A stretch of DNA of 64,000 nucleotides from the NCBI GenBank assembly GCA_002269645.1, contig NIVC01000230.1, forward strand, positions 124,001 to 188,000, read 5' to 3'. Under the pieces are notes generated by a model. The model searched no databases. It was not told the origin of the DNA and saw only the letters and a list, made by a program, of their open reading frames with translations. This document shows positions 1,562 through 62,099 of the stretch, piece after piece. Position numbers and translations under genes: made by a program. Within the stretch, counting starts at the first letter, position 1. Each line of letters starts with the position of its first letter. Source of the stretch: Macrostomum lignano (taxonomy: Eukaryota).

Positions 1562-2630
1562 CTCCCACACACCTTTACTATATACTATAATAGTTTCGCA
1601 GTCATTCAATTCCTTCTCGTTGGGCTTCGTGTAGGATTCTTGCACCTGCTCACAAAGGACGTTGCAATTCCCATCCATTGGTGTGCGACTGCAATCAAAT
1701 AATTTTCAAAGTGTTATGATTCACCCATATTTGGTAGGATCTGGAAATCTGTTTGCAAGATACTATATCCAGGGAGAAAATCTGCTAAGGGCAATATTTT
1801 TGCTATAGCTTTGTGATAATTGGTATTAAAGGTCTGGAGCTTAAGGAGAGTACTTATAAGTAGGACGATGGGAAACTATACATGTAGGTTTCTTGAAAAA
1901 TTTTAGGAGATGTAGCTGTTCTTCCAAAAATGCATTACACTGTAGATACGGTTTTCATTTTTTTCATTACAAAAATTGTTATTGCTTTTAATTTGAGACA
2001 GAGACCCAATGTTCATCTTTTGATTTGTTTTGCCTTTCCTGTAGCTCTGTTGATACAGTGTGTATTCATAGAGATTCCCGTTTCCAAAATTAGGATTGTA
2101 TGTTAATTTTACACATGCGTACAATCGTACACGTCCTAATGCCTAAAAACCATAAAATAGCACGGCTTGGCTCGGCTCACATAAAGCCAATGAGAGTGGA
2201 GCTGTGCCATTAATTTTTATGATTTTCACGTACGTCTGTATATAATTACGTAGGTTATTAGGCACAATTGCGTAAGGATATAAAATTAACATGGAATTAT
2301 ACTAATATACGAAAGCTATATATGAATAGCGAGCTATGAACCTACGAGTACTTGAGTACGTACGTGTAGTCCTTGGTCAGGTCTGGAGATTCAGGCGGAG
2401 AAGGTGTGTAGCGGCAGGATTAAAGGATTGGAAAACTTATGATGGGCGTGCAACAAAATGAATATGGTTGCAGCGATTTCTCTTCAAAACAAAATTCTCA
2501 AATAAGGACGAGATTTGCAGCATGCTCGATCTGTGAAAAATTGTTTTTACGTAATAAAAACTCGAAAGCGGTCTTCGAAAGAAAACCGGCCGCCCGCGGG
2601 CGACGCTGAAGACGCGTTTGAGCGCCTTCA

Positions 2631-4380
2631 TACTAGATTAGCGGCAGTTGGCCGCTGTCGACGACGGCGTCAGTTTTATCATTGCAGCCGGTCCCGACGT
2701 GTGGACGGCCGTCCGGACTCTGACGAGGCGCAAAAAGCGCGTGGCGCTGAACCTGGCCGGCGACGACCCGGAGGAGCGCCGAAATGAATTGCGCGACTTC
2801 TTCGCCGGCATCGTGAACGCGCCCGCGTCGCCGCTGCTTGGTTTTACACTCCACCGGACTCGCCGCTCCCAGCTGAGGAGGACTTCTGCACCAGACCAGT
2901 CACCACGGAGGACGTTGTGCTGTTCGCTCGGAAAACATCAGGCAGCAAGGCGCTCGGCCCCGACGAAGTTCCGGTCGAAGCGCTGCGGGTTCCGCTGTGT
3001 GGCCTCCCAGGTGCTCGCCGGCGCCTCTGCGCGCCCACCGAGTGGACCGTCGCGCATATTGTGCCGATCCCGAAGAAGGTAGGGACAACGCAGAAAGAAG
3101 ACCACCGCGATATCTCGCTGATGTCCTGCACCGCGAAGCTCTTCAACCGGCTGCTGCTCGATCGTCTGCAGTCGGTGCTGGACCCGTACCTGCGGTACGA
3201 GCAGAACGGATTCCGGCCCCAACGCGGTACAGTGACAGATCCTCGCACTCCACCGGGCCATCAACGCGCATCCGCCAGTATACGCTGATCATTGTCTTCG
3301 TTGATTTTCGAAAGGCGTTTGACTCGGTGCTGAGAGCCGCGCTTCCCTTCGTCCTTCGAGCCTACCGGGTCCCGCAGCTAATCGACGCTGTCATGGCGCT
3401 GTATTGCGACACCCGAGCTGCTGTGGTGACGGCGGACGGCCTGTCTGACCTGTTCGACACTTCCTCAGGAGTTCTGCAGGGCGACACGCTAGCGCCGTTC
3501 CTCTTCGTGCTGCTGCTGGACTAGGTGCTTCAGACCGCACTCCCTTCAGCTGACGACGGCTTTCTGCTGCGCAGACACATCGGTCGCCGTCACGGCGAAA
3601 AGCGCCTGAGCGTGCTTGGCTACGCCAACGACCTTGCCCTCCTGTCCTCGTCCGTCCAGCCCAGCGCCAGCGCCAGATCGACAGTCTGGTCGAGGTAGCA
3701 TTGAGCGTCAACACGCTGAAGACCGAGATGCTGACTGTGTGCTGGCCGACATCCCAGCGGACCTGACGTGCAGACGGGCAGACGACCAAGCTCGGTGTTA
3801 CCTCGATTACGCTGCTCGGCGATCTGGTACCTCACGTGGAGGAATACCTCCGGCGGCGCAGATGACTTGCCTGGGTGGCCTTCCGGCCGTTCTCCAGTCC
3901 GAAGAGCTGCCCGACCGCCAGAGGGCTCTCGGCTGTGGCTAGCGGTGGTCGAGACCGTCCTGCACGCCGAGACGTGGACGCTGACCGCGGTTACGCTGGA
4001 GTGGCAGCTGGGCTCGGCGCACTCAGGGCTGCTCCGTGCGGTCTTTCGAGCTGACGAGAGCGCGTCGGGACCGCGAGGCCCTGTACGATCGGGCCTAAGC
4101 TGCAGCGCCCGTCCATCATCCAGCTGTGCCGCGGCGGCGTATTCAACTGGCGGGCCACGTGATTCGGACCGAAAGCTACTGCCCCAACCTGTTCAGGACC
4201 TCCTGCTGCTTACCTTGCAGTGTCCAATATGGCAGGGTCAGACCCAAACCCGTCGACACTACATGTACGTGCATGGACAGCTAGCCGATCTCCTACACGA
4301 CGCCCGACACTACCAACATCGCGGACTTCGTCCGCTCTAAGGCTCTGCTGCGCGAAATGCATCTGACGAACCTTGATTTG
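2631..4380 (+). mobile_element. Degenerate 5'-truncated non-LTR retrotransposon (RTE-like reverse transcriptase)
   Basis: RT motifs are spread over several frames: KALGPDEVP; W..AHIVPIPKK; RDISLMSCTAKLFNRLL; EQNGFRP; FVDFRKAFDSV; GVLQGDTLAPFLF; LGYAND (a degenerate YADD). Frameshifts and stops are present. Boundaries are approximate and no TSD was found. Confidence 0.9.
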
Positions 4381-4966: not shown

Positions 4967-14156
<9,190 letters not shown>

Positions 14157-17340: not shown

Positions 17341-18639
17341 CGAGGGTCAGTCAAAAAGTAATGATAATTTTGTTGTACCGCCTAAAATATCAGAGTTATT
17401 GAACTGCAACTGGTTTCATTTGAAAAAACATCTTTTGATCTTTATTTGACAGAGTTTTGGTTCTTCTAAAGTGATTGATGCTTGCATGGTGACACTCTAA
17501 TCACAGTATATCCTTTAAGCAATGGAAAATTCAAAAATCGAAGCTCATACTAACGTGAAATTTCTTGTATAGCTTGGTTGGAAGCCAGCCGAAATCATTG
17601 ACGCTTTGAAGAAGGTCTATGGGGACATTGCTCCACTAGATCCAACCATTTACTGCTGGATTCAGGCTTTTAAGGAAGGCCGAGAGTCCACGGAAGACGC
17701 CCAGCGGTCGGGAAGGCCCACAACATCGCGCACAGGGGAAAATGTGGTAGCTGTGCAGCCAGTGATTGAGCTGGATCGGCACGTGACCATAGACAATATT
17801 GCTGAAAAAGTGGGCATTGCTCATGGCAGTGCTCACTCCATTGTGATGGACTATCTTGGTCTGAGCAAGCTGAGTGCTTGCTGGGTCCCGCGGCTGTTGC
17901 GGCCTGAACACTGGGTTCAATGCACTGAGTGCGCCATCAACCTGCTGAACCGCTTGGACGCTGGTTCAGAAAACAGTTACCAGCGCTTAGTGACCGGGGA
18001 TGAAACATGAATATTTCAATACAATCCCGAGTCCAAGGTCCAATCCAAGGAGTGGCTGCCACGAGATTCAGCAGGCCCCAAGAAGTTCCATTCGGAATGG
18101 TCTGCAGCGAAGGTCTTGGCGACAATTCTCTGGGATGTTGAGGGAGTGGTGACGGTGGACTTCTTGGAAAGCCAGAAGACCATCAATGCCACCTATTATG
18201 AGTCGCTTCTGTAAAAGCTCCGCACCGAACTGGCCAAAAAGCAACCTGGCAAGTTGCACCTTGGGATTCTCTTTCACCACGACAAAGCACCAGCTCACAC
18301 TTCTCGGCTCTGCCATGAAGCCCTGCGAGATTTCTGCTGGGAAATCCTCCAGCATCTTCCATATAGCCCTGGTTTGGCTCTTTCGGACTTTTTTTGCTTC
18401 CCAAGCTGAAGGAAGCAATCAAAGGAGTCCAAGATGAGGACAAAGAGGCTGCCAAAAAGGCTACTGTACAGTGGCTTGCATCACAGCCTCCTGAGTTCTA
18501 CGCAAACGGCCTGGAGAGATGGCGACACTGCATGGAGAAGTGCCTGACCCTGGAGGGGGACTATGTTGAAAAGTAGATTTCCATTTAAAGTTTGAGACTC
18601 GTGAGAACAAAATTATCATTACTTTTTGACTGACCCTCG
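17341..18639 (+). mobile_element. Full-length (1299 bp) inactive mariner DNA transposon (DD34D type)
   Basis: Perfect 34-bp TIRs cgagggtcagtcaaaaagtaatgataattttgtt; TA TSDs at 17339-17340 and 18640-18641. Transposase remnants run from ATG 17522 to 18576: HTH region, WVPR, VTGDET, HHDKAPAH and YSPGLALSD (degenerate YSPDLAPSD), with several stops and a frameshift. Confidence 0.96.
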
Positions 18640-23974: not shown

Positions 23975-25392
23975 GGGGATGTGAACTTAAGAGTCAAAAT
24001 GGAGCCTAAAGCATTGGGTCCCGATTTCTCTACGCCAATCCCTTCATTTGGAGCCAAATAGCTCCCGTTATGCCGAAAACCCGACCACTTTAGCATTTGG
24101 GGATCTCTGTGGGGAGAAATTGGATAAATGGGTATTTCATGTGAACTTAAGGCTCTAGAATGGAGCCTAAAGCATTGGGTCCCGATTTCTCTACGCCAGT
24201 CCCTTCATTTGGAGCCAAATAGCTCCCGTTATGCCGAAAACCCGACCACTTTAGCATTTGGGGATCTCTGTGGGGGAGAAATGGGATAAATGGGGATTTC
24301 GAAGCTTTTGGTGGACCTGGAGCTGTGCCATAGTGGGCATGAGAGGCTGCCCGTTTGCAGCACGGCGGTTGCGGATCTCGTTCTGCAGCTCGATCGGGAG
24401 GCGGCTCCATAGGGCTTAGACGTGGCTGTCGAGGGTGCAGTGAGCTCGCCAAGGCCGAGAAGTTGGCCGATAGCGAGTCGGGGGGCGTTGGTGAAGGTCT
24501 CAAACTCGTCTACGTCGAAAGCGAAGCTGCATAATAGCGCGAGGCGTTGGAAGCAGGCATTCTTCTGCTCCTGGGTGTCGGCGCAGTTAGCCTGGAGGAC
24601 GCAGCAGGCCTCAGCGTAAGCGATGGGTTGGCAGGCATCGAGGGCGCCCAGCTTTCTGAGGGCGGAGCCGAATAGGAGACCGCGGAGTGGTTCGAACTTG
24701 TCGACGTTGAGACTAGATTGGTCGACGCGGTAGAGGAAAACGTCCCAGAACCCAGGGAATGCGACAGGGTCGATGCCGTCGAATGTCGGGAGACGAACTT
24801 TCGATCGCAATCACTCGTAGCAGACGACGACGCTGATGTCGTGCCAGGATAAATATAGCGGCGAGCTGTTCTATAAGCAACTGATTCTGCTGCATCATCG
24901 CAGTCATGGAGGTGAGGAGGGCGTTACCGTCGATGACAGGTGCAGCAGGTGATGAGACAGTGTTAGGGGATGAGACGGGAGGATCCATACTCGGGGGCAG
25001 CTGACGTTGCAGTCGGTGGGCCGCTGGGTTCGATGTGCGGCTGCCCCGCGGCAGGGGCCGCTTTAGAGGCCGCTTCAGCAGAGGCTGTGGTGTGGTCGTC
25101 CTGGAATTGATGGATCTGGTCGCCAGATGGGGCAGTCGTTCATCGCGTGATGACCATGCTAACGCTCAGGTAATCTGTTCACCTCGTCATTTAAAGATTT
25201 GAAGCTCCTAGAGTCTTAAGTTCACATGAAATCCCCATTTATCCCATTTCTCCCCACAGAGATCCCCAAATGCTAAAGTGGTCGGGTTTTCGGCATAACG
25301 GGAGCTATTTGGCTCCAAATGAAGGGACTGGCATAGAGAAATCGGGACCCAATGCTTCAGGCTCCATTCTAGAGCCTTAAGTTCACATCCCC
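23975..25392. mobile_element. Non-autonomous element with ~185-bp terminal inverted repeats enclosing a captured BEL/Pao gag fragment
   Basis: Left arm 23975-24300 is two tandem ~165-bp units; right arm 25208-25392 is their reverse complement. The interior on the minus strand encodes VRLPTFDGIDPVAFPGFWDVF...VDKFEPLRGLLFGSALRKL (DUF1759-like). No TSD was identified. Confidence 0.8.
24330..24988 (-). pseudogene. BEL/Pao-type gag fragment (DUF1759-like), frameshifted
   Basis: ORFs 24713-24988 and 24229-24810 (-); similar to the LPxFDG...W..F...L..xDKL.YL...L.G.A pattern. Confidence 0.7.
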
Positions 25393-27136: not shown

Positions 27137-28341
27137 TATTGACTGATTGATTGATTGACTGATTGATTGATTGATTGATTGATTGATTAATTGATTGACT
27201 GATTGATTGACTGATTGACTGATTAATTGATTGACTGATTGATTGACTGATTGACTGATTAATTGATCGATTGATTGACTGACTGACTGATTGATTGACT
27301 GATTGATCGATGGATCGATTGAATAATGGTTTTATTTATTTAGTTATTTATTCATTACTTCATTTGTTTGGTTTTTCGATTAAAGCAGTAACTGTTTATT
27401 TAGTAGTTAGTCCAACATTAGCTAAGAATCGAATGCTCAGGCACCCCCCCCATCGATCAATTCCTCCCAGGCCACGCAGTCTGTCACCTCAGAGTCGCCT
27501 CAGAGCCAGCAACTGCTGGAAGCTCAAAGCCGTGAACGCCAGTCGCTGCTGGCCCGCCTGAAATCCGCGGCCGAGGACTGTGCCAACCTGCGGCTCGATC
27601 GCGAGGCGATGCGGCGACAGCTCGATGCGGCGCAGTTCGATCGGCGAATGGCGCTGGCCGAAGCCGAGGAGAGGCGGGCCGACTTGGCGACGGCGAGGCG
27701 AGAGGTCGACGACAGGGATGGACGGTTGGAGAGGATGGCGGCGAGTCAGGTGAGACATGATGGGATTTGAGTCTGTGATGATGGGATTTGAGTCTGTGAT
27801 GATGGGATTTGAGTCTGTGATGATGGGATTTGAGTCTGTGATGATGGGATTTGAGTCTGTGATGATAGGATTTGAGTCTGTGATGACCAATGCACAGAGA
27901 GTGTACATGCTTGATGATTAGAAAGTCAGGGCCGAGTTTTATTGCCAAATTCTCCAATTCTGTTTGGCCTCAGGTGCGCACAGAGAAGGAGGTTGGCAAT
28001 CTTCGAAGCCAGCTGTCAGAGCTGCGCCGTCAGCTGGACTCGGCCGAGAACAGTTGCCAAGCTGAAGCAGCCGAGAACCAGCGTCACCGGGCCAAGATCC
28101 TGAGCCTGGAGTCTCAGCTGGACAGCCGCATTCAGGAGCTCGCCGCGGTCACCAACGCGCTGATCGAGAAGCGACGCTCCGAAGAGGACCTGCTGGCTCG
28201 GGTGCAGCAGCTGCAGCGGCAGCTCTCCAGCTCCGAAGAGACCGTGACCAGACTCAAAGGGCAGTTGGAAACCGAGCAAACTCGACCGCGAGTTGCCGCG
28301 CCCCTGCCGCCGCCGCCGCCGCAGCCACCGCCGCCGCCGCC

Positions 28342-28387
<46 letters not shown>

Positions 28388-30048
28388 AAGCAGCCACCAG
28401 TTCTGCCTACAGTTGAAGAGGAGGTGCAAACAGCCGACACTGCGGCACCATGGCCTGAGGAGATGAATCAACGGATGGCAGAGCTGGATGCCAGGATTAA
28501 CCGGCTGATCGCTGGAGCTCGAGAGGGGGTCGGCGGTGGACCTTCGGAGCAGCGGCGGAGAGTGGGGTGGGTGCTGATTGGCGGGGAGTGGGGTGGATGC
28601 TGATTAGTGGGGAGTGGGGTGGGTGCTGATTGGCGGGGAGTGGGGTGGGTGCTGATAAGCGGGTAGCGGGGAGTGGGGTGGGTACATAGGCTTCTCCTTC
28701 ACTAATTCAGAATCCCAACTTCATCCCCGACCCCAATCCCACAGTGCCCCAGGCATCGAGCCAGAAGCAGACGAGCAGCCAGAGTCGGCAACCGCGCACC
28801 GCAGCAGCCAGCAAGTGGCCACTTCAACACCGCAGGCTCCCAGAATTGACACCCAAACTGAGCCAATGCCAACCAATCAGCGAATCGATTTGCTGCTGAA
28901 CCGAACTGAGCAGTTGGAGGCCAGCAACCAGCAGCTGGCAAAAGATGTTCGAATGCTCCGGCAGATGTGCGCAGATCTGCTGGAGTCCCGAAAGGAGCTC
29001 AAAAATGAACTGGCGGTTGCTAAGGTGAAGGAGAAAAATCGAATAACTTAGAGTTTCTTCCTAGATCAAGCCTCCCATGAGCCCAAACAGTTTTATTTAC
29101 TTAAATCCCATCATCACAGACTGAAATCCCATAATCACAGACTGAAATCCCATAATCACAGACTCAAATCCCATCATCACAGACTGAAATCCCATCATCA
29201 CAGACTCAAATCCCATCATCACAGACTCAAATCCCATCATCACAGACTCAAATCCCATCATCACAGACTCAAATCCCATCATCACAGACTGAAATCTCAT
29301 CATCACAGACTGAAATCTCATCATCACGGACAGCTGAAATCCCAATTTAACCCCATTTTTAAACCTCCATATTTTCGCCGCAGATGTCTGGCTCGACCTC
29401 AGCAGCCGCTAATCTGGAGAGCTCCGATGTGAGTCAGGCTCACCATCAGGGCCTGTCAGACTACCTGTTCCAGACTGAGACCCTGAGGGCGATGATTCTG
29501 CGTCAGCTACGCGACCTGCAGAACTCCAAGCAGCGGCTGCAGTTTAGGTGTGACAAATATGAGCTGGGAACACATTGATCACAATTTCAAATCTCACAGT
29601 CCCGATTTCAAATCTCATAGTCCCGATTTCAAATCTCATAGTCCCGATTTCAAATCTCACAGTCCCGATTTTAAATCTCACAGTCCCGATTTCGAATCTC
29701 ATAGTCCCGATTTCAAATCTCACTGTCTCAAATTCGCACGGCAGGTCTCAGCAGCGGGAGCTATCTCTGTCACAAGAGCTGCAGTCTCAGCAGGCCGCCG
29801 TTGACAGGTCTTGGCAAGCCTTGCAGGCGAGTCTGAGCGCATCTGCCCAGCCTAGGAACTCTTCATCAGTTGGGGCTTATCGCGATTTCTACCTGAGACG
29901 CGCTGGCAACATCGTCGCCTCCAAAGCCAAGGCCGCCGAGTCGACTCGCCTCATTGAAGCCATTCGCCGACACCCGCTGAGCGACGCCGTCAAACGATGC
30001 GGATGTCGGCACGCTGACAACTGCCCGATGAAGGCGGAATGGCAATGA
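25415..30048 (+). CDS. Coiled-coil protein with polyproline tract (paralog A), family unknown, ~705 aa
   Basis: Proposed exons are 25415-25430 (uncertain first exon METAV), 25756-26237, 27471-27749, 27974-28566, 28745-29024, 29384-29547 and 29745-30048. All are GT-AG and sum to an open frame. The 28566/28745 junction has alternatives. Heptad-rich segments are homologous to gene B. Confidence 0.75.
25495..25755. repeat. ~21-bp minisatellite (atgttagatacaagctccagc) ending at the acceptor of gene A exon 2
   Basis: Tandem units are visible. Confidence 0.85.
26268..27315. repeat. (GATT/GACT)n microsatellite, gene A intron
   Basis: About 1 kb of tetranucleotide repeats. Confidence 0.97.
27757..27885 (+). 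repeat. 21-bp minisatellite atgatgggatttgagtctgtg (~6 copies)
   Basis: Tandem units; reverse complement of the array at 29100-29335. Confidence 0.95.
29100..29335 (-). repeat. Same 21-bp minisatellite in inverted orientation (cacagactcaaatcccatcat, ~11 copies)
   Basis: Tandem units are visible. Confidence 0.95.
29575..29730. repeat. 21-bp minisatellite (cacagtcccgatttcaaatct), gene A last intron
   Basis: Tandem units are visible. Confidence 0.93.
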
Positions 30049-30270: not shown

Positions 30271-30855
30271 GCAGTTCTGTGACAGTGGCTTTGATTGGCT
30301 TGATTGTCTATGGCCGAGAGCAGTTCTGTGGCAGTGGCTTTGATTGGCTTGATTGTCTATGGCCGAGAGCAGTTCTGTGGCAGTGGCTTTGATTGGATTG
30401 ATTGTCTATGGCCGAGAGCAGTTCTGTGGCAGTGGCTTTGATTGGCTTGATTGTCTATGGCCGAGAGCAGTTCTGTGGCAGTGGCTTTGATTGGCTTGAT
30501 TGTCTATGGCCGAGAGCAGTTTTGTGACAGTGGCTTTGATTGATTTTCTATGGCCGAGAGCAGTTCTGTGACAGTGGCTTTGATTGGCTTGATTGTCTAT
30601 GGCCGAGAGCAGTTTTGTGACAGTGGCTTTGATTGGCTTGATTGTCTATGGCCGAGAGCAGTTCTGTGGGGACAGTGGCTTTGATTGATTGTCTATGGCC
30701 GAGAGCAGTTCTGTGACAGTGGCTTTTATTGGCTTGATTGTCTGTGGCCGAGCGCAGTTCTGTGGGGACAGTGGCTTTGATTGGCTTGATTGTCTGTGGC
30801 CGAGCGCAGTTCTGTGGGGACAGTGGCTTTGATTGGCTTTATTGTCTATGACCGA
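30271..30855. repeat. 49-bp tandem array (gcagttctgtggcagtggctttgattggcttgattgtctatggccgaga), ~11 copies
   Basis: Tandem units lie downstream of the gene A stop. Confidence 0.95.
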
Positions 30856-31247
30856 GTTATAAAGGCAAAACTTTCTATAGATTCTGAATATAATACAGAA
30901 TATTTTGTGGCCACTGCTGTCCTTGAGAAATATTCTTTGAGAAAAATTATACCAAAGAGATCCTCGAGCTCGGAGGATTTCCTTTTCTCATAAATATGTT
31001 TCTCAAAGTCAGTTCCTTCTCTCTGATGAGAAGTCTGGAGAGTCTTTGGATTACACCAAGCCCGACTAAAACTGACAATGAGCATGAGAAGTTCAATTAT
31101 CTTACCCTCGCCTTTGTTGAAGTCTTTAAATAATTATATATTTCAAGCATAAAGCATCGGACGTGAATACCGTTAGGACAGGGGGCTCATATCTCCGTAG
31201 TGTATTTTTTCCTATCCTTTTCAATTGCCGCCTATTTCTCCAGTGCT

Positions 31248-32135: not shown

Positions 32136-44448
<12,313 letters not shown>

Positions 44449-45539
44449 CCTGCCGCTTTACAATATTATGTATACCTCATTTTGTAGTAAAACATTCCCA
44501 AATTCTTTTCCTATTCGCTTATTCGGAGCAGCTGCCCTCATGCTGCAGCCGAATTACCTTTTTCCTGTCTTTATCTTACGGCGCAGTTGAACTTTGGTGC
44601 CAACGTCGTGAAAATTTGTTTTCATAAACTGTTTTCGTCCCTATAATTTTAAACGCAGACTCTGAACTTAAAATTTTGCAGCAAAAAGCCGGACGTTATA
44701 ATCGTCCACTTTTGTCAGTTGGCAACTATCTATACTTTAACTGCCTCTACGAACATTAATTATAACTGCACCGCTATGATGTGGTCAGAATTTATCAAAT
44801 TGTTTTGATTTGACTTAAAAAAGTTAATGTAAGATTCCACTTTTACACGTACACACAAGATCTTCCTGTAGTGATGTATGCTGCTGAAGGAAGCACGTCA
44901 TAAAATGGATTTGTAAGTGACATCCCTGCAGTAATGTGGAATGTACATGTACAGTAAATTGACTTCCGCGTTCACATGCTGCTATCAACAGGGCCATAAC
45001 TTATTAAAATATCAGGCGCATACACGTGTACACGCGTGTACATGTATGTACATGTATTGGTAATGTCAGTGAAAAAAACGCTCGATATAGATCGCTGAAA
45101 AGTATTGCATTTACATTTTCCAACACTCAATTAATTAGTCAAAGGCTGTTAATAAGGAATTTTTTCGATACATGTACATTTACAATGTATATAACATACT
45201 GGACTACTAAATGGACTAAGCTACCAGTATATTGTGTTCCTGTACGAATCGAAATTTCACTCCATTCATAATCATATCTTCATAATTATCTTCATCTACT
45301 ATCTTCACAAATTCAATAGGCGCGCCATTTCAGTATGTGCTTCCAGAGATTAGAATGAAATACATGTACATACACATGAACTGACCAATAGAAATAAAAG
45401 ATGAATATGCATGTACGCGTTTGTTCGTACATGTAGCTAGCTACTGGTATATAGCATGGGAAACCCGCACCAGCTAAGTTCTAGTAAGGATCCATGTGAC
45501 GACAATCATTTTAGTAATGTGTACAACAACAACAAAACT

Positions 45540-47347
45540 GCGCTGCATGTCAGCGTTACAGGGCGCGCCTCAGGGCCAGGTCACGAACAAAGTACGCCAC
45601 GCCTGGCCGCTGGGCGAATCCGCGGGGCGCCGGTGTCAGCCAGCAGGCAGTCGAAAAAACGCTGAGTGTGGGCCTGCCCCTACCGGTAGGGTGCCTGCAG
45701 CGTCACCTCCTGCTTTGGACCCCCAGGGAAATGAAACGGGAAAAAGCGAGTTAGCCTCCGCATCAACGGCAACCAGATTGCGTATGACCTGGCACCGGTG
45801 TACCTTGGAGCGTGACTGAACGGTCGGCTAACCTTCAAAAAGCATGCCGCAGGTGTCCGGGCTAGGATGGCGCCGACGACGGCCGCTGGCAGCCATGGCC
45901 AATCGCAGCACCGGCGCCGATCAGAGCATCAGAGCAGCATACGTCAGCACCATCCGCGCCGTGGTGGACTACGCGGCGGGCACCTGGTTGTGCGGCGCAG
46001 CCCCGTCTACAAGAAGATCTATCGAGAGGCGATCATTACTGGTTGCGTCCTGCCATCTAAAACTTGGAGAGTTCTCAGACTGGCGGACCTTCACCGATCT
46101 CCTTCGTAGCCTCTGAGAGAGCCGCCAGGCTTTGTGAACGGATCCTCCGCCTGGAGCTTAACGTGTCAGCCGTTACTACAGCACCTGCCACCTCAAGACC
46201 AAGGCTCAAGAACCGCACGCTCGAAGCACTCACACGGTCTAACAACAACCGGGACGCGGAAAGATTGGACGAGGTCACTAGAAGACCGTTCCGGAACTGC
46301 TGGCGCAGCGCTGTCACGGAGCTCCTGTCGGTCACGGTCCTCGATGCGCACCGGCGAGGCGATGCGGCGACTTTAGGCATCCCACCGTGGGAAGCTGCTG
46401 TCAACGATAAGGTCATCTTCAGCCTCGAAGCAGCTGCCTGCTGCCGCCGTTCGGACCCTCAGGTGGCTAGAAACGCGGCGGCGCTTGAGGTGCTCGGAAC
46501 GCCCCCGCCGGGCTGACATCTGTGTCTGGACAAATGGCTTCGTGGCTGAAGGCACTGGGCCAGGTGGTAGCGCGGCCATCGTCTGCACTGAGTTGGCAAC
46601 TTATGTGAAAAAACAACCAGCATGCAGGTACCTGCAGCTCCTTTGACGCGGGGATGATCGCTATCAGGATGGCCCTGGAATTCACCAAAGACGCAACCCG
46701 CCAAGGCAACCCGCCGACTCCCTGTCCTCGCTCACGGCACTACAATTGTAGGCACACAGGGCCAGGAAACTGCAACCGGTATCAGATGCTGGAACCTGCT
46801 GCTCGAAATCAGCCGCAACACCCCCCATTAATCTGGTCTGGGTGCCGGCGCACTGCGGCATCCCCCTCAAATGAGGCGGCAAACAGAGAGAGCTGCCGGG
46901 TTGGCCAGAAACCTGCAACAGAATGACGCACCGGTCTCCCTCAGCGTTGCCAAGACTGCCGTTCGGCGCGCCATGGAAGATAGCACCCTCCCGGCACGCT
47001 GGCCGGCCTTCAACGCGAGAAATCGGACAGAGCAGACGGCGGTGTGCGTGCCAGCTCAGGGCCGGTGCGTCGTCAATGCTCTGCGCCGAAGTTAGACACC
47101 GACTGGGTTTGACCGACTCCCCGCAATGTCCGGACTGCGGAGAGATTGACGACAGTGAACATGCTTTGTTCTGCTGCCCCCGTGGGGACGCTGGGCGCAT
47201 GATGCGCCTTGTCGGCAACGACAACCGAGCGCCTCCTTCGGGTTTCAGGACTCGGTCTCTCGCTCCTTCGGAGCATGGGGCGCTGGCCCCCGCCTGTATC
47301 GGCGCCGCCGCGCCGCAATGGCGAGTGCTGAATCAGAAGAAGAAGAA
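45540..47347 (+). mobile_element. Degenerate 5'-truncated I-group/Ingi-like LINE with RNase H domain
   Basis: Late RT and linker (AYVSTIRAVVDYA, IITGCVLPS); RNase H (VWTNGFVAEG, LVWVPAHCGIPSNEAAN); zinc knuckle CPDCGEIDDSEHALFCCP; (AAG)n tail at ~47333-47347. Many stops and frameshifts; the 5' end is approximate. Confidence 0.88.
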
Positions 47348-48421
47348 AAAGCACCTCCTGCACCGGCTGTGCAGTGGGTAGTACTACGTCTCGGCGGGGA
47401 TGAGGTGGCCTGCCAGCTGAAGTTGCCGATGTAATATATCCATGTAATGTACTATAAGTATTTGTGGCTAGCTAAACATAAATTTACATTGCACATGTAG
47501 TTAAAGGCTAAGCTGCATGTTACGTCACATGTAGATATTAAACAATGTATTTTGGCCATGAACTTTCAGCCCTTTACAAAAAGTTGCAACTTTAATCATC
47601 ACAGAAGATCAGTGTCAAAAATATAACGTCGCGCTTCTGCTAAGCAAAAACATGTTACTCGCTTTTCTGGAGAATTTTATTTTCCACAGCCAATCAAATA
47701 AACCACTCCATTTGTTTGAAACTTTGTTGGCGTTCTTGGCAACATTTCGGTTTTTATTGTCTGCCGCTTTTATGAAATAGAGATTTATGAAATAGCTAGA
47801 GTTAGACATAAGACATAACATAAATCAGTTGAAAGTACTACTCCAAGTCCAAGGGTGACCCACGTTGATTGTGCAGAAAAAAACAGAAATCAACAGCCCT
47901 TTAAGATCCAATAGCTTCCTTACGCCAGTTAGGATTAAAAAAATATTTTGGATTTTTCATACAACAAAACACCATTAGTAACATTAAACTGCTGTAGGCC
48001 TATTTGTAGTTAACTAGAAGAATAGTTTTTGAAAACTTCATAGCTAGATTTCCTAATTTTACAATCTATCTATAGTGCCTGATAGGGTAGGTGAATAGAA
48101 TATAAATTCTAGAAGTAGCCTAAGGCCTAGTATTGAATTTCAAGGCCTGACTAATACTTTGTTGTTTATACAATTGACATTGTATCATTAAGCAACATTA
48201 TTCTAGCTGCTCCATATATTTTTTCTATAAAAACTATTAATTTAATTGCTAAAATATTTTTACTTTAAATAGCAAAGATAGTTGTCTATTTGGTTATACT
48301 TTAAGTTTAACAAGTCCTTAGTTGTAGGCCTACCTAGTCCTAATTTATTTTTGTAGATCCCTCTGCTCTAGCTAGCTAGTTTAGGTTAGATAAGCATATT
48401 AATATATTTTTTGCTTGAAAA

Positions 48422-51400: not shown

Positions 51401-54400
51401 ATTTTTCAACCAGTGTACAATTCTGTAAGTTCAGTGTACAGTCCCAGTGTGCGCAAAGTGACTGCAACAGTGCTACGTAGAAACATACATGCGCAACCTC
51501 CGAAATTCGGTCGGCCATGCGACTTAGTTTTAACAAAAATGCGACGTAGTTTTTGGCCCAAAATGCGACTTACATGTAAAAAAAAACCCTAAAGCAAAAT
51601 AAACGCAACTTTGGGTAAACGGCAGGAGTAACTATGACTGTCTTATTAAGCCAAAATGCCTCGTCAGCTACTTAGCACTACTACTTGGTTATTTTTTCGG
51701 GTGGGCATTTTTGCGACTTCCTTGGTTGGCCGCCAAATCGGTCGGCCGCATCGGCCGCCTCGGCCGACTGTTGCGCATGTATGCGTAGAAAGCATTTCAA
51801 ATTTGTGTTTTTATGTAAGGCACAAACAGGTTTAAATAGAATTACAGTTTGGCATTTGCACTGGGTCAAGTAATAGCTTTTCTTGAAAGCAGGCCAAACC
51901 TTTTAACTAATGGACCAAATGAGGTATCTTTTTCTAATTGCGATACCATTCGGGGTATCTTTTCTGATTGAGATGCCATAATGAGGGTATCTTTTCTGAT
52001 TGAAATGCCATCAGGAGGGTATCTTTTCTGATTGAGATGTCATCAGAAGGGTATCTTTTCTGATTGAGATGCCATCAGGAGGGTATCTTTTCTGATTGAG
52101 ATGTCATCAGAAGGGTATCTTTTCTGATTGAGATGCCATCAGGAGGGTGTCTTTTCTGATTGAGATGTCATCAGAAGGGTATCTTTTCTGATTGAGATGC
52201 CATCGGGAGGGTATCTTTTCTGATTGAGATGTCATCAGAAGGGTATCTTTTCTGATTGAGATGCCATCAGGAGGGTGTCTTTTCTGATTGAGATGCCATC
52301 AGTAGGGTATCTTTTTCTAATTGAGATACCATTCGAGGGTATCTTTTCTGAGATGCCATCATGAGGGTGTCTTTTCTGATTGAGATACCATCGAAGTACA
52401 AGCCTATTTTACGAATGAACATAAGCACAATCTAGCCACACCTCAGAAGCTACCGTCAATATCTGCAAAATTAAACAAAATGATTTTGAAACGCACCTGT
52501 GTCTTTTAGGAGAAGCTCTTGTTGAATGCGGCGACGCATACAAGCAGATGGCGGAGATCAAGTACAACTTGGAGGACGGGGTCAAGCAGAATTTCCTGGA
52601 TCCATTTAACAGCCTACTGCACCAGGATCTCAAGGAGATTAACGTGAGATTCCTGTTTATATTCGGTATCTTCTACCCAGCAGCTTTGGGTATTTTATTG
52701 GGTATCTACCCCAACTGTTTAGGGGTATTCTATTGGGGATCTACCCCAGCTGATTAGGAGTGTGTTATTGGGTATCTTCCCAGCTGTTTAGGAGTATTCT
52801 ATTTGGTGTCTCCCCAGCTGTTTAGGGGTATTCTACTGGGTATCCATCCCAGCTGTTTAGGAGTATTCTACTGGGTATCCATCCCAGCTGTTTAGGAGTA
52901 TTCTACTGGGTATCTCCCCAGCTGTTTAGGAGTATTCTACTGGGTATCCATCCCAGCTGTTTAGGGGTATTCTATCGGGTATCTCCCCAGCTGTTTAGGA
53001 GTATTCTATCGGGTATCTCCCCAGCTGTTTAGGAGTATTCTACTGGGTATCTCCCCAGCTGTTTAGGAGTATTCTACTGGGTATCTCCCCAGCTGTTTAG
53101 GAGTATTCTACTGGGTATCTCCCCAGCTGTTTAGGACTATTCTACTGGGTATCTCCCCAGCTGTTTAGGAGTATTCTACTGGGTATCTCCCCAGCTGTTA
53201 GGAGTATTCTACTGGGTATCTCCCCAGCTGTTAGGAGTATTCTACTGGATATCCATCCCAGCTGTTTAGGAGTATTCTACTGGGTATCCATCCCAGCTGT
53301 TTAGGAGTATTCTACTGGGTATCTCCCCAGCTGTTTAGGAGTATTCTACTGGGTATCTCCCCAGCTGTTTAGGAGTATTCTACTGGGTATCTCCCCAGCT
53401 GTTTAGGAGTATTCTACTGGGTATCCATCCCAGCTGTTTAGGAGTATTCTACTGAATATCTCCCCAGCTGTTTAGGAGTATTCTACTGGGTATCTCCCCA
53501 GCTGTTTAGGGGTATTCTACTGGGTATTTCCCCAGCTGTTTAGGAGTATTCTACTGGATATCTAAATCTCATATTTCAGCATCATCGCAAGAAGTTGCAA
53601 GGCCGCCGGCTAGACTACGACTGCAAGAAAAGAAAAGGTGCTCTTTAAACTTTTTGTCAGCAAAATTCTAATTTTATTTTCGACTTCTACTTTAAGTAGA
53701 CAATGCGTGTTTTTTCTATCTTTTTTGTTTCAAGGCTCGGGCAGAGCGCCGGCCGAAGACGATGTGCACGCGGCTGAACAGAAATTTGCCGAGAGCAAAT
53801 CCTTGACTGAAGGCGCCATGATTAACTTTCTCTCGTCAGATGTATGTCTGCTGATGTGCCCTTGGGTCTTTGCCTGCACTCAAATTGTCTGCTTCACACT
53901 GCCCGCTCACTGTGTCTAATCTCCCTCGTGTCTAATCTCCCTCGTGTCTAATCTCCCTCGTGTCTAATCTCCCTCCTGTCTAATCTCCCTCGTGTCTAAT
54001 CTCCCTCCTGTCTAATCTCCCTCCTGTCTAATCTCCCTCCTGTTTAATCTCCCTTCTGTCTAATCTCCCTCCTGTCTAATCTCCCTCCTGTCTAATCTCC
54101 CTCCTGTCTAATCTCCCTCCTGTCTAATCTCCCTCCTGTCTAATCTCCCTCCTGTCTAATCTCCCTCCTGTCTAATCTCCCTCCTGTCTAATCTCCCTCC
54201 TGTCTAATCTCCCTCCTGTCTAATCTCTCTTCCTTTCCCCTCCTCTCTTCCGCTTTCCACCCTCTTTTAGTTCCAATTGCTCTCCCCAAATATGCACTTG
54301 AATTGAACTTTACACCGTCAGTCAGAGCAGGTGTCAGCCCTGTTCGAGCTGGTCAGCGCAGAGCTCGCTTATCACCAGGAGGCCGCCAGGATCCTGTCGG

Positions 54401-60620: not shown

Positions 60621-61041
60621 TAAATCCATGTAAATAAAGATTCTAAATTTAAATTCCACTGTAAATTGCCCTCCACTCATTCCAGTCCCGAACCCGCTTA
60701 GCAACAGCAGCCATGGCGTCGAGTTTGTCAACTTGCTCGGCCGCTCCGACCGGTCAGCTCAGATTCGACAATCGGGTTGCCATAGTAACCGGAGCCGGCG
60801 CCGGCCTAGGCCGACAGTACGCTCTGTACTTTGCCGCCAGAGGCGCCAGCGTGGTGGTGAACGACCTTGGCGGCGGCATCCACGGCGGGGACAGCGGCGA
60901 CAGCAGGCCGGCCGACCTGGTGGTCCGGGAGATCCAATCAGCTGGCGGCACCGCCGTGGCCAACTACAGCTCTGTGGAAGATGGAGAGGCCGTTGTCAAG
61001 ACGGCCATTGATCGGTTAGCGAGGGGCCGGATGCGCGCTAG

Positions 61042-61465
61042 AAATACCCTATTAAAATAAATAACCGCTACGAATACCCCACTCAAATAAATACCCACTA
61101 GAAATACCCTACTCGAATAAATACCCGCTAGAAATACCCTACTCGAATAAATACCCGCTAGAAATATCCTATTCAAATAAATACCCACTAGAAATACCCT
61201 AATCAAATAGATACCCCCTAGAAATACCCCACTCAAATAAATACCCACTAGAAATACCATACTAGAATAAATACCCGCTAGAAATACCCTACCTAAATGA
61301 ATACTCGCTAGAAACACCCTACTTAAATAAATACCTACTATAAATACCCTACTCGAATAAATACCCGCTAGAAATATCCTATTCAAATAAATACCCACTA
61401 GAAATACCCTAATCAAATAGATACCCCCTAGAAATACCCTACTCAAATAAATACCCACTAAAACT
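61042..61465. repeat. 30-bp minisatellite (ctagaaataccctactcgaataaatacccg), HSD17B4 intron 1
   Basis: Tandem units are visible. Confidence 0.93.
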
Positions 61466-62099
61466 ACCCCTAATTAAAACAAAAATTTTCAATCCGGAAA
61501 AAACCGCCGCAGCTTCGGCCGGGTTGACATCCTGGTGAACAATGCCGGCATCCTGCGGGACAAATCGGTGCAGAACATGACGGATCAAGACTGGGATTTG
61601 GTTCATCGAGTGCACATGAGAGGCAGCTTCCTGGTCACCAGAGCCGCTTGGCCGCACATGCGCAGACAGAAATTCGGTCGCATTATTATGACGTCATCGG
61701 CCGCGGGAATCTACGGGAATTTCGGCCAGAGTAATTATAGTTCGGCCAAGCTGGGCTTGCTCGGACTGTCCAACACTCTGGCCTTGGAGGGCAGGAAGTA
61801 CGGCATCCTGTGCAACACCATCGCTCCCATTGCCGGGTCCAGACTCACCGAGTCTGTCATGCCGCCTGATCTCATTGACCAGCTCAAGCCCGAGTATGTT
61901 GCACCTCTGGTGCTGTACCTGTGCCACGACTGCTGTCAGGACAGCGGCGGCCTGTACGAAGTTGGGGCCGGCTGGATTGGCAAACTGCGCTGGGAGCGAA
62001 CCAAGGGAGCCATTGTGCGCTCGGCTGGGAACCCGGCCACGCCCGAGTGCGTGCGGGACAACTGGGCCCGGATCTGCGACTTCTCTGTGGGTTCCGGCT

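What the first reader, a model, noticed from the sequence alone, without database searches (positions are those of the whole stretch)
51484..51783. hAT-type MITE family carrying the 28S rRNA R2/I-PpoI target site with its cleavage core altered
Seen: a 300-bp element (13-bp TIRs, perfect 8-bp TSD) occurs twice, here and at 8283-8580, each time in an intron of a housekeeping gene. Its centre (51613-51675; 8412-8473) matches the conserved 28S helix 69-71 segment at 31/33 and about 24/26 nt on either side of a short core. In both copies the core AGGT is replaced by TTA (CTTAAGGTAGCC becomes CTTATTAAG[C/G]C). Known: this is the target of R2 retrotransposons (TTAAGG/TAGCC) and of I-PpoI, and the Pokey transposon inserts in this same stretch. 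Weaker resemblance to upstream 28S sequence may extend to ~51540. Inference: a DNA transposon captured the most parasitised rDNA site and is dispersing an altered version. It could be a relic of rDNA-targeted transposition, a binding decoy for R2-type proteins, or a source of rRNA-matching small RNAs, since both copies are sense to their host pre-mRNA. The substitutions in the H69 stem are not compensatory, which argues against an rRNA structural mimic. I know of no described MITE of this kind but could not search for one.
Basis: partly seen in the sequence, partly recalled or inferred. Interest (0 to 1): 0.85.

Follow-up and report, generated by a model that had tools for sequence, protein, structure and literature searches.

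The report
Flatworm transposon carrying 28S rRNA fragment
A 300-bp non-autonomous DNA transposon of the flatworm Macrostomum lignano does carry a 63-base piece of the 28S rRNA gene spanning the R2 insertion site with its centre scrambled, but that piece decays as fast as the rest of the element, so it is most likely passively captured filler DNA and not a working decoy.

Summary
The window is Macrostomum lignano. Two about 300-bp elements (51484-51783; 8283-8580) have 13-14-bp TIRs and 8-bp TSDs. Both lie in introns, one in a BAR-domain gene and one in PSMC5 intron 1. A third, truncated relative sits at 9429-9571 on the minus strand. Each carries a 63-nt patch that matches eukaryotic 28S (58-73 bits against at most 30 for 500 shuffles). 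The patch lies inside the standard R2 target, and its mismatches cluster at the R2 nick.

Capture by a class II element holds. The hAT assignment rests on TSD length alone, and the TIR does not fit the hAT motif. No evidence supports a decoy, small-RNA or rRNA-mimic role. The patch diverges at the same rate as the arms, both between copies A and B (87% against 85-88%) and between copy A and its homeolog (4/63 against 12/235).

Two features point to microhomology-primed template switching as the capture route. The only TIR-like 14-mer in the whole LSU starts 2 nt after the patch. A TTTGGGT direct repeat brackets the captured block.

Genome-wide copy number, the autonomous partner and the presence of R2 could not be tested. 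Modest interest: a new instance of rDNA capture by a transposon.

The parts
51484..51783 (+). MITE copy B (300 bp). It lies in an intron of a BAR-domain (endophilin-like) gene on the + strand and keeps 22 CpGs.
51476..51483 (.). Left TSD of copy B, CGTAGAAA. The right copy is at 51784-51791 and is identical.
51484..51497 (+). Left TIR, CATACATGCGCAAC. It is 100% complementary to the right TIR at 51770-51783.
   Evidence: I1
51770..51783 (+). Right TIR, GTTGCGCATGTATG.
51517..51585 (+). Three tandem 22-24-bp subterminal units (ATGCGACTTAGTTTT...). The TGCGACTT motif recurs at 51712 in the right arm. These are candidate transposase-binding repeats (inferred).
   Evidence: D1, D3, D4
51613..51675 (+). 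63-nt patch derived from 28S, equal to LSU positions 2212-2274 of L003 and to the H69-H71 region. It lies inside the 84-bp R2 target duplex used in vitro.
51646..51653 (+). Scrambled core. 28S AGGTAGCC reads TTAAGCCA here, so 7 of the 11 mismatches to 28S fall in 9 nt that straddle the R2 nick (TTAAGG|TAGCC).
51609..51616 (+). CTTTGGGT, the left member of a direct repeat that brackets the captured block. The right member, TTTCGGGT, is at 51695-51702. GGGT is also the first 4 nt of the patch, and 28S reads CGGGT there.
   Evidence: read directly (D5 in copy A)
8283..8580 (+). MITE copy A (298 bp), in PSMC5 intron 1. 16 of B's 22 CpGs are TpG/CpA here. The copy is present at 100% identity in L001 and L002 and at 94.6% in the homeolog L123.
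8412..8474 (+). 28S-derived patch of copy A.
9429..9571 (-). Copy C, a truncated or diverged relative. It matches profile positions 93-225, has a right end TTGCACATGT..ATGTATG and no left TIR. It is antisense to PSMC5 and lies 100-240 bp upstream of exon 2.
9477..9539 (-). 28S-derived patch of copy C. The flanks are almost identical to 28S (44/45). The core differs from both 28S and the A/B copies (TACAGTATGATAACAGCT).
4967..4978 (+). PSMC5 exon 1 (ATGGCAGCCGTG|GTAAGC, encoding MAAV). It defines intron 1, which contains copies A and C.

Best explanation
This is a family of non-autonomous class II transposons (MITEs making an 8-bp TSD; superfamily hAT or P-like, undecided) in Macrostomum lignano. 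The central block is filler DNA copied from the 28S rRNA gene.

Shown:
- TIRs, TSDs and sharp copy boundaries.
- A 63-nt stretch of 28S homology.
- Insertions A and C predate the split of the M. lignano homeologs.
- The 28S patch diverges at the same rate as the arms.

Inferred: the patch was acquired once, by template switching during double-strand-gap repair after an excision, or by some other aberrant event involving an element end. The switch was primed by microhomology, for two reasons. First, the only sequence in the whole LSU that resembles the element's right TIR (GACGCGCATGAATG against GTTGCGCATGTATG, 11/14) starts 2 nt after the patch and has the same orientation. Second, the captured block is bracketed by a TTTGGGT direct repeat that overlaps the CGGGT with which the patch begins in 28S.

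The scrambled core and the local CTACTT(A/G)G duplication are read as errors of this low-fidelity synthesis or of later repair. The patch is then carried passively. The element is mobilised in trans through its TIRs and its TGCGACTT / GGTCGGCC subterminal repeats.
For: - Structure.
- 28S homology far above chance and confined to 63 nt.
- No RNA family, tRNA or coding signal.
- Equal decay of patch and arms: 87.3% against 85.2%/87.6% for A against B, and 4/63 against 12/235 for A against its homeolog.
- Shared left junction (AAYTTT|GGGTAAAC) and shared downstream TATTTGGGTGGG in A, B and C, which argue for a single capture.
- A unique TIR-like 14-mer at LSU 2276-2289, next to the patch at 2212-2274.
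- The review of rDNA-TE interplay regards such rDNA modules in non-autonomous TEs as modular reshuffling that is mostly of no benefit to the TE: PMC10946416.
Against: - Mismatches to 28S are not spread evenly. In B 7 of 11 lie in 9 nt and in C 9 of 11 lie in 17 nt, both over the R2 nick (permutation p about 1e-3, with windows chosen post hoc). The two lineages have different cores.
- Copy C keeps flanks that are 44/45 identical to 28S although its arms are only about 60% like those of A and B. Part of this may come from C lying in a slowly evolving region next to an exon, about 98% identical between homeologs.
- Only three loci and their homeologs could be examined.
- The current structure has 13-21 nt of spacer plus the right arm between the patch and the TIR, so the TIR-microhomology model needs at least one further rearrangement.
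Confidence: 0.62

Rival explanations
1. Scarred endonuclease target, landing pad or decoy. In this reading the MITE acquired an intact R2/I-PpoI-type target. A site-specific nuclease (an R2 endonuclease or a homing endonuclease) recognised the conserved flanks in MITE copies and cut the core. Error-prone repair scrambled the core independently in different lineages, and only cleavage-resistant masters amplified. The retained flanks might still bind R2 protein.
For: Changes cluster exactly over the nick TTAAGG|TAGCC in two lineages that have different cores, while the flanks stay 28S-like. The patch lies wholly inside the 84-bp duplex that suffices for R2 targeting in vitro. R2 lineages exist in Platyhelminthes.
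Against: No R2 element or homing endonuclease was seen in the window or the loci. R2 is not documented for Macrostomum, and the known planarian and liver-fluke R2 families have lost target specificity. The flanks are not protected from decay in A against B or in A against its homeolog. B and C share three derived core states, which is compatible with one ancestral event followed by drift. The window sizes of the clustering test were chosen after seeing the data.
Confidence: 0.1
2. Relic of residence in rDNA and use of a cryptic end. In this reading an ancestor of the family sat in or beside the 28S gene. The transposase used the TIR-like 28S sequence GACGCGCATGAATG as a substitute right end and mobilised the adjoining 28S stretch. 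Later rearrangements moved the patch to the interior.
For: The only LSU 14-mer with at least 10/14 identity to the right TIR lies 2 nt after the patch, in the matching orientation. A precedent for a DNA transposon living in this 28S region is Pokey.
Against: The patch is internal, separated from the right TIR by about 94 nt of genuine arm carrying the family's own repeats. No 28S sequence lies next to either TIR. No rDNA-resident copy is available. Several extra steps are needed.
Confidence: 0.15
3. Functional RNA module. In this reading the patch acts at the RNA level when transcribed within host introns, as an rRNA-helix mimic, as a sponge for snoRNAs or ribosome-assembly factors, or as a source of rRNA-matching small RNAs.
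For: Copies A and B are sense to their host pre-mRNAs. The whole element folds better than shuffles do (z = -4.9).
Against: There is no Rfam match on either strand. The H69 stem register is broken in A and C. Copy C is antisense to its host gene. The patch evolves neutrally. The fold z-score is explained by the TIRs and subterminal palindromes.
Confidence: 0.04
4. Chance resemblance to 28S.
For: None beyond the short length of the match.
Against: The match scores 73 bits against a maximum of 30 in 500 shuffles. The same 63 nt match in three copies. A gapped MITE-specific pattern hits no true rDNA locus.
Confidence: 0.01

Closest known systems
Pokey / mPok (piggyBac DNA transposon and its MITEs, Daphnia)
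   Same: A class II element and MITEs associated with the same conserved 28S stretch. They carry rDNA-derived internal sequence (PMC3849761, PMC10946416).
   Different: Pokey inserts into the 28S TTAA, makes TTAA duplications, and its captured module comes from the IGS. Here the TSD is 8 bp, the copies sit in gene introns, and the captured module is the 28S coding sequence itself.
SINE28 (mammalian SINE derived from 28S rRNA)
   Same: A dispersed repeat that contains a 28S fragment (Longo et al. 2015, as cited in PMC10946416).
   Different: SINE28 is a retroposon. The element here has TIRs and fixed 8-bp TSDs, so it moves as DNA. I did not compare which part of 28S SINE28 carries.
[quoted passage not shown]
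   Same: A mobile element that carries an imperfect copy of 28S sequence from around the R2 site (PMC5035012).
   Different: Those are autonomous non-LTR retrotransposons, in which the 28S-like tract plausibly serves target priming. No such role can be assigned to a cut-and-paste MITE.
5S-derived SINEs, Cassandra / Ajax TRIMs
   Same: An rDNA-derived module inside non-autonomous TEs.
   Different: There the module is the 5S Pol III promoter and clearly benefits the TE. The 63-nt 28S patch here has no known promoter function.
Filler DNA and host-fragment capture in internally deleted DNA transposons (Ds, P-element derivatives, Pack-MULEs, hAT transduplication)
   Same: From established knowledge: short ectopic patches flanked by microhomology and local slippage duplications arise during gap repair. 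The TTTGGGT bracket and the CTACTT(A/G)G duplication look like this.
   Different: The donor here is a multicopy rRNA gene, and the patch sits beside a TIR-like donor motif.

Membership tests
MITE / non-autonomous class II transposon | Terminal inverted repeats | tested here: met
   14/14 in copy B and 12/13 in copy A. The TIR 13-mer occurs only at the four element ends in the window.
MITE / non-autonomous class II transposon | Target-site duplication of fixed length | tested here: met
   8 bp. CGTAGAAA is perfect for copy B. AGAGTGGA is perfect for copy A in homeolog L123.
MITE / non-autonomous class II transposon | Small size with no coding capacity | tested here: met
   298-300 bp. The longest ORF is 61 aa and has 0 hits among 1.84 billion representatives.
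MITE / non-autonomous class II transposon | Many dispersed copies and an empty site showing mobility | tested here: inconclusive
   There are two full copies and one fragment in 64 kb. All three other PSMC5 loci (L001, L002, L123) carry copies A and C, so no empty site was seen. Genome-wide copy number could not be reached.
hAT superfamily | 8-bp TSD | tested here: met
hAT superfamily | Terminal motif 5'-YARNG and TSD consensus nTnnnnAn (recalled from established knowledge) | tested here: not met
   The termini read CATAC. The TSDs are CGTAGAAA and AGAGTGGA, neither with T at position 2, and only the first has A at position 7.
hAT superfamily | Autonomous partner encoding a hAT transposase with the same ends | not testable with these tools
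   No M. lignano genome search was available. The TIR is absent elsewhere in the window and the loci.
P superfamily | 7-8-bp TSD with termini starting CA.. (recalled) | tested here: inconclusive
   The TSD length and the CAT start are compatible. No transposase evidence exists.
Eukaryotic LSU rRNA (as a gene or a structural mimic) | Match to the Rfam LSU model and conserved H69-H71 pairing | tested here: not met
   No Rfam hit. The H69 stem register is broken in A and C. Only sequence homology over 63 nt remains.
R2 target site | Intact cleavage core TTAAGG|TAGCC with its 28S flanks | tested here: not met
   The flanks are present, but the core is altered in all copies.
Pokey/mPok (piggyBac) | TTAA target duplication | tested here: not met
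   The TSDs are 8 bp and are not TTAA.
SINE (including SINE28 and 5S/tRNA SINEs) | Pol III head or poly(A)/simple-repeat tail, with no TIRs | tested here: not met
   No tRNA, no 5S, 7SL or snRNA match, and TIRs are present.

The most novel reading that the evidence does not exclude
The MITE family disperses the two protein-recognition flanks of the universal R2/I-PpoI 28S target through gene introns. The cores are scars of repeated cleavage by a resident 28S-specific endonuclease. The copies would then be cleavage-immune decoys or former extra-ribosomal landing pads for an rDNA-specific parasite.
Probability: 0.1. Interest if true: 0.75.

Novelty: new member of a known kind. Interest (0 to 1): 0.35.

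Why it matters
The finding adds a class II MITE that carries 28S coding sequence to the short list of transposons with rDNA-derived modules. That list so far holds 5S SINEs, Cassandra/Ajax, SINE28 and Pokey with its IGS repeats. The MITE also offers a concrete, testable reason why this 28S stretch was captured: a sequence mimicking the element's own TIR starts 2 nt after it. If the minority reading were right, and the cores are scars of a site-specific nuclease, it would be the first sign that the R2 target can be parasitised outside rDNA by a second mobile element. In practice, such copies can contaminate 28S-based read mapping and small-RNA annotation in Macrostomum.

Tried and rejected
- Rfam on the element (E up to 10) and on the whole window: no rRNA, snoRNA or other family. 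ARAGORN found nothing. The snoRNA and SINE ideas were dropped.
- Exact and gapped MITE patterns in metagenome contigs and viral contigs: 0 hits. The family was not found outside the M. lignano loci.
- Harvesting more M. lignano DNA: a mariner-like ORF query gave 0 hits and an RT piece gave 3 weak non-Macrostomum hits.
- The MITE's 60-aa ORF against 1.84 billion representatives: 0 hits.
- Extension of 28S homology upstream to about 51540: nothing above noise.
- H69 mimicry: B can form a shifted 5-bp stem, but A and C cannot.
- A 25-nt similarity at 30846-30870: chance level.
- Resemblance of the patch's right flank to the element's own AAAATGCGACTTAG repeats (D2/D3): only two shared A/B changes point that way, so it was judged unconvincing.
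- Literature strings for the TIR and the altered core: no paper holds them. No description of Macrostomum TE families was found.
Full report
ORGANISM AND CONTEXT. A hand-spliced PSMC5 (26S proteasome Rpt6) from window 9.7-12.9 kb is 99% identical to a Macrostomum lignano protein, P0004. Two contigs of assembly GCA_002269645.1 (L001, L002) are about 99% identical to window 229-24000. A third contig (L123) is a 93-97% identical homeolog. The window is therefore M. lignano, a flatworm that underwent a recent whole-genome duplication (PMC5704211, abstract). GC content is 45.5% and CpG observed/expected is 0.80.

THE ELEMENTS. Copy B (51484-51783) has perfect 14-bp TIRs (CATACATGCGCAAC / GTTGCGCATGTATG) and a perfect 8-bp TSD, CGTAGAAA. 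Copy A (8283-8580) has 13-bp TIRs with one mismatch. Its TSD is 7/8 in the window but a perfect AGAGTGGA on both sides in the homeolog L123, so the TSD was perfect at insertion.

A and B are 85% identical, and similarity stops exactly at the TIRs. BLASTN and an nhmmer profile find one further relative, copy C, on the minus strand at about 9429-9571. C matches profile positions 93-225 (E 6e-15). It has a right end TTGCACATGT..ATGTATG and no recognisable left TIR.

The left arm carries three tandem 22-24-bp units built around TGCGACTT, and that motif recurs in the right arm. GGTCGGCC-type motifs lie next to both TIRs. This is the usual look of transposase-binding subterminal repeats, which is an inference. 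There is no tRNA, no Rfam family and no ORF with any relative.

LOCATION. B lies between two exons that match consecutive parts of the Pfam BAR domain (profile 53-95 at 49.0-49.2 kb and profile 108-139 at 52.55-52.65 kb). It is therefore in an intron of an endophilin-like gene on the + strand.

The paralog protein P0124 begins MAAV|EVVSGPHS. Its first exon, ATGGCAGCCGTG|GTAAGC, is present unchanged in the window at 4967-4978. A and C therefore lie in PSMC5 intron 1.

The other annotated isoform, P0004, starts at the acceptor near 9670. M. lignano uses a spliced leader that ends in ATG (PMC8629364), so the same stretch may also act as an outron (inferred). A and B are sense to their host genes and C is antisense.

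THE 28S PATCH. L003 holds a complete 18S-5.8S-28S unit according to Rfam. Against that single 3353-nt LSU, B scores 73.4 bits (87.5% over 64 columns), A 58.1 and C 60.8. The best scores of 500 shuffles of B averaged 20.9, with a maximum of 30.1.

Homology is confined to LSU 2212-2274, from GGGTAAACGGC to CTAATTAG. All four 63-mers align without gaps.

The patch lies wholly inside the 84-bp duplex used as an R2 target in vitro (bioRxiv 10.1101/2024.11.11.623112). The R2 first-strand nick is TTAAGG|TAGCC, as shown by the pre-cleaved oligonucleotides in PMC13000458 Table 1.

IS THE CORE CHANGE NON-RANDOM? Yes. In B, 7 of the 11 mismatches to 28S lie within 9 nt. In C, 9 of 11 lie within 17 nt. 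Both clusters are over the nick (permutation p about 7e-4 and 9e-4, though I chose the window sizes after seeing the data). A and B share one core (CTTA-T-TAAG, a 9-nt palindrome). C has another (TACAGTATGATAACAGCT). B and C share three derived states, which is about what chance gives.

IS THE PATCH UNDER CONSTRAINT? No sign of it where a fair test is possible.
- A against B: left arm 85.2%, patch 87.3%, right arm 87.6%.
- A against its homeolog A' in L123: 4 differences in 63 patch positions and 12 in 235 arm positions.
- C against its homeolog: one difference in the patch. However, that whole exon-proximal region is about 98% identical apart from indels, which also explains why C's flanks still look so much like 28S (44/45).

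The caveat is that only three loci were examined.

HOW WAS IT CAPTURED? Three features bear on this.
- A, B and C share the same left junction (AAYTTT|GGGTAAAC) and the same downstream block (GTATNTATTTGGGTGGG), so there was one capture.
- The captured block is bracketed by a direct repeat: CTTTGGGT...TTTCGGGT in B, CTTTGGGT...ATTTGGGT in A, and TTTTGGGT...ATTTGGGT in C. The GGGT of the left member is also the first four bases of the patch, and 28S reads CGGGT there. The spacer after the patch contains a local duplication of CTACTT(A/G)G. This is the signature of template switching at microhomologies with slippage.
- The whole LSU contains exactly one 14-mer with at least 10/14 identity to the right TIR in that orientation. 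It is GACGCGCATGAATG at 2276-2289 (11/14, including GCGCATG), and it starts 2 nt after the patch. By my own estimate, placing one hit at random in 3.3 kb would put it this close to a patch boundary about 1% of the time or less, and this is a post hoc figure. The motif is conserved in all 112 rDNA loci examined.

I therefore think this stretch of 28S was copied because it sits beside a mimic of the element's own end, not because it is the R2 site. The mimic could have acted as a misprimed template during gap repair or as a cryptic transposase substrate. The present structure, with the patch separated from the TIR by a spacer and the right arm, needs at least one more rearrangement, so this step is inferred and not shown.

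AGE. A and C are present in both homeologs, so they predate that split. A and A' differ by 5.4% and A and B by 15%. The family was thus active before the genome duplication. Whether B is younger is unknown.

SUPERFAMILY. An 8-bp TSD fits hAT but also P-like elements. The termini (CATAC) and both TSDs fail the canonical hAT motifs, which I recall from general knowledge. No transposase could be searched for. 'hAT-type' is unproven.

COMPARISON WITH WHAT IS KNOWN. The 2024 review of rDNA-TE interplay lists the following rDNA-derived TE modules: 5S-promoter SINEs, Cassandra/Ajax TRIMs, SINE28 (28S) and Pokey/mPok (IGS repeats). It considers most such modules to be neutral products of modular reshuffling (PMC10946416). 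Fish R2 families that carry 28S-like 3' UTRs are another precedent (PMC5035012).

No class II MITE with a 28S coding fragment is listed. No paper in the library contains the TIR or the altered-core string. Macrostomum repeat families have not been catalogued in the papers I checked. This is a new member of a known kind.

WHAT REMAINS OPEN. The repeated scrambling of exactly the nick region in two lineages is not fully explained by one sloppy capture. A scarred endonuclease target is the most interesting reading that the evidence does not exclude, and I give it about 10%. R2 occurs in flatworms, but the planarian and liver-fluke families have lost target specificity, and nothing is known for Macrostomum. 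Copy number, the autonomous partner, rDNA-resident copies, small RNAs and protein binding could not be addressed with the available collections.

Noticed in passing
window 7639-7905 (TSD CTTATAGC at 7631-7638 and 7906-7913): A different 267-bp MITE with TIR CCCTATTGCAGCC.. and an 8-bp TSD is present in the window but precisely absent from L001, which shows the empty site AAAGCTTATAGCTGAAAG. Transposons making 8-bp TSDs have therefore been active very recently in M. lignano.
   Followed up: partly
L001 6024-6686 (TSD ACATAGCC); empty site at window about 6085-6092: A 663-bp element with perfect 21-bp TIRs (CCATAGTCAGGAAGGTGGCAG) and GGCGCACA-type subterminal repeats is present in L001 and absent from the window. 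It sits next to an older related end.
   Followed up: partly
window 8283-8580 against 51484-51783: CpG decay is strongly asymmetric. 16 of B's 22 CpGs are TpG/CpA in A, and none of A's 3 CpGs has decayed in B. This accounts for up to 16 of the 40 substitutions. It hints at germline cytosine methylation or some other CpG-specific mutation process in this flatworm.
   Followed up: partly
window 61036-61469: A 30-bp minisatellite (14.5 copies) lies between the two short-chain-dehydrogenase exons at 60.7-62.1 kb. The reverse complement of its unit (GGTATTTATTTGAGTAGGGTATTTCTAGCG) resembles the MITE segment GGTATTTATTTGGGTGGGCATTTTTGC. It may be a MITE-seeded array.
   Followed up: partly
L003 5936-5949 (LSU 2276-2289): The universally conserved 28S sequence GACGCGCATGAATG is 11/14 identical to the MITE right TIR and starts 2 nt after the captured stretch. 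It is the only such match in the LSU.
   Followed up: yes
window 4967-4978 and about 9670: PSMC5 is annotated in two forms. One has a cis-spliced 4-codon first exon (MAAV, P0124). The other starts at exon 2 (P0004, marked 'partial'), consistent with SL trans-splicing supplying the ATG. Both forms use the same acceptor, which lies just downstream of MITE fragment C.
   Followed up: partly
window 9429-9720 against L123 14200-14540: The 250 bp upstream of PSMC5 exon 2, which includes MITE fragment C, is about 98% identical between homeologs apart from three indels. Copy A, 1 kb further upstream, is only about 94.6% identical. This may be a constrained regulatory or splice-proximal region built partly from the transposon.
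   Followed up: no
window 33399-41672 (+): A single open frame of 2757 codons encodes a Ser/Lys/Glu/Asp/Arg-rich, highly repetitive protein with units of about 110 aa such as ...RRASRESVRKSSEFQRRASKDSRKSEDRSSKHSD.... It was not characterised.
   Followed up: no
window 27890-28603 and 42553-43692 (+): Two paralogous coiled-coil ORF segments share VRTEKEVGNLRSQLSELRRQLDSAENSCQAE.., which indicates a local gene duplication.
   Followed up: no
window 11.7-12.5, 13.0-14.0, 14.5-16.5, 19.6-21.3, 22.2-23.8, 54.3-57.4 and 61.9-63.3 kb: Introns and intergenic DNA are packed with long tandem arrays, which show up as long repetitive pseudo-ORFs on both strands. Array lengths differ between the window, L001, L002 and L123.
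   Followed up: no
window 2500-4340 and 45500-47400 (+); 17606-18010 (+); 24229-24990 (-): Degraded transposon remnants: two non-LTR retrotransposon fragments (an RT motif FVDFRKAFDS and a C-terminal CCHC knuckle followed by an A-run), a mariner-like N-terminal ORF, and a Gag-like ORF. These identifications were made by eye only.
   Followed up: no
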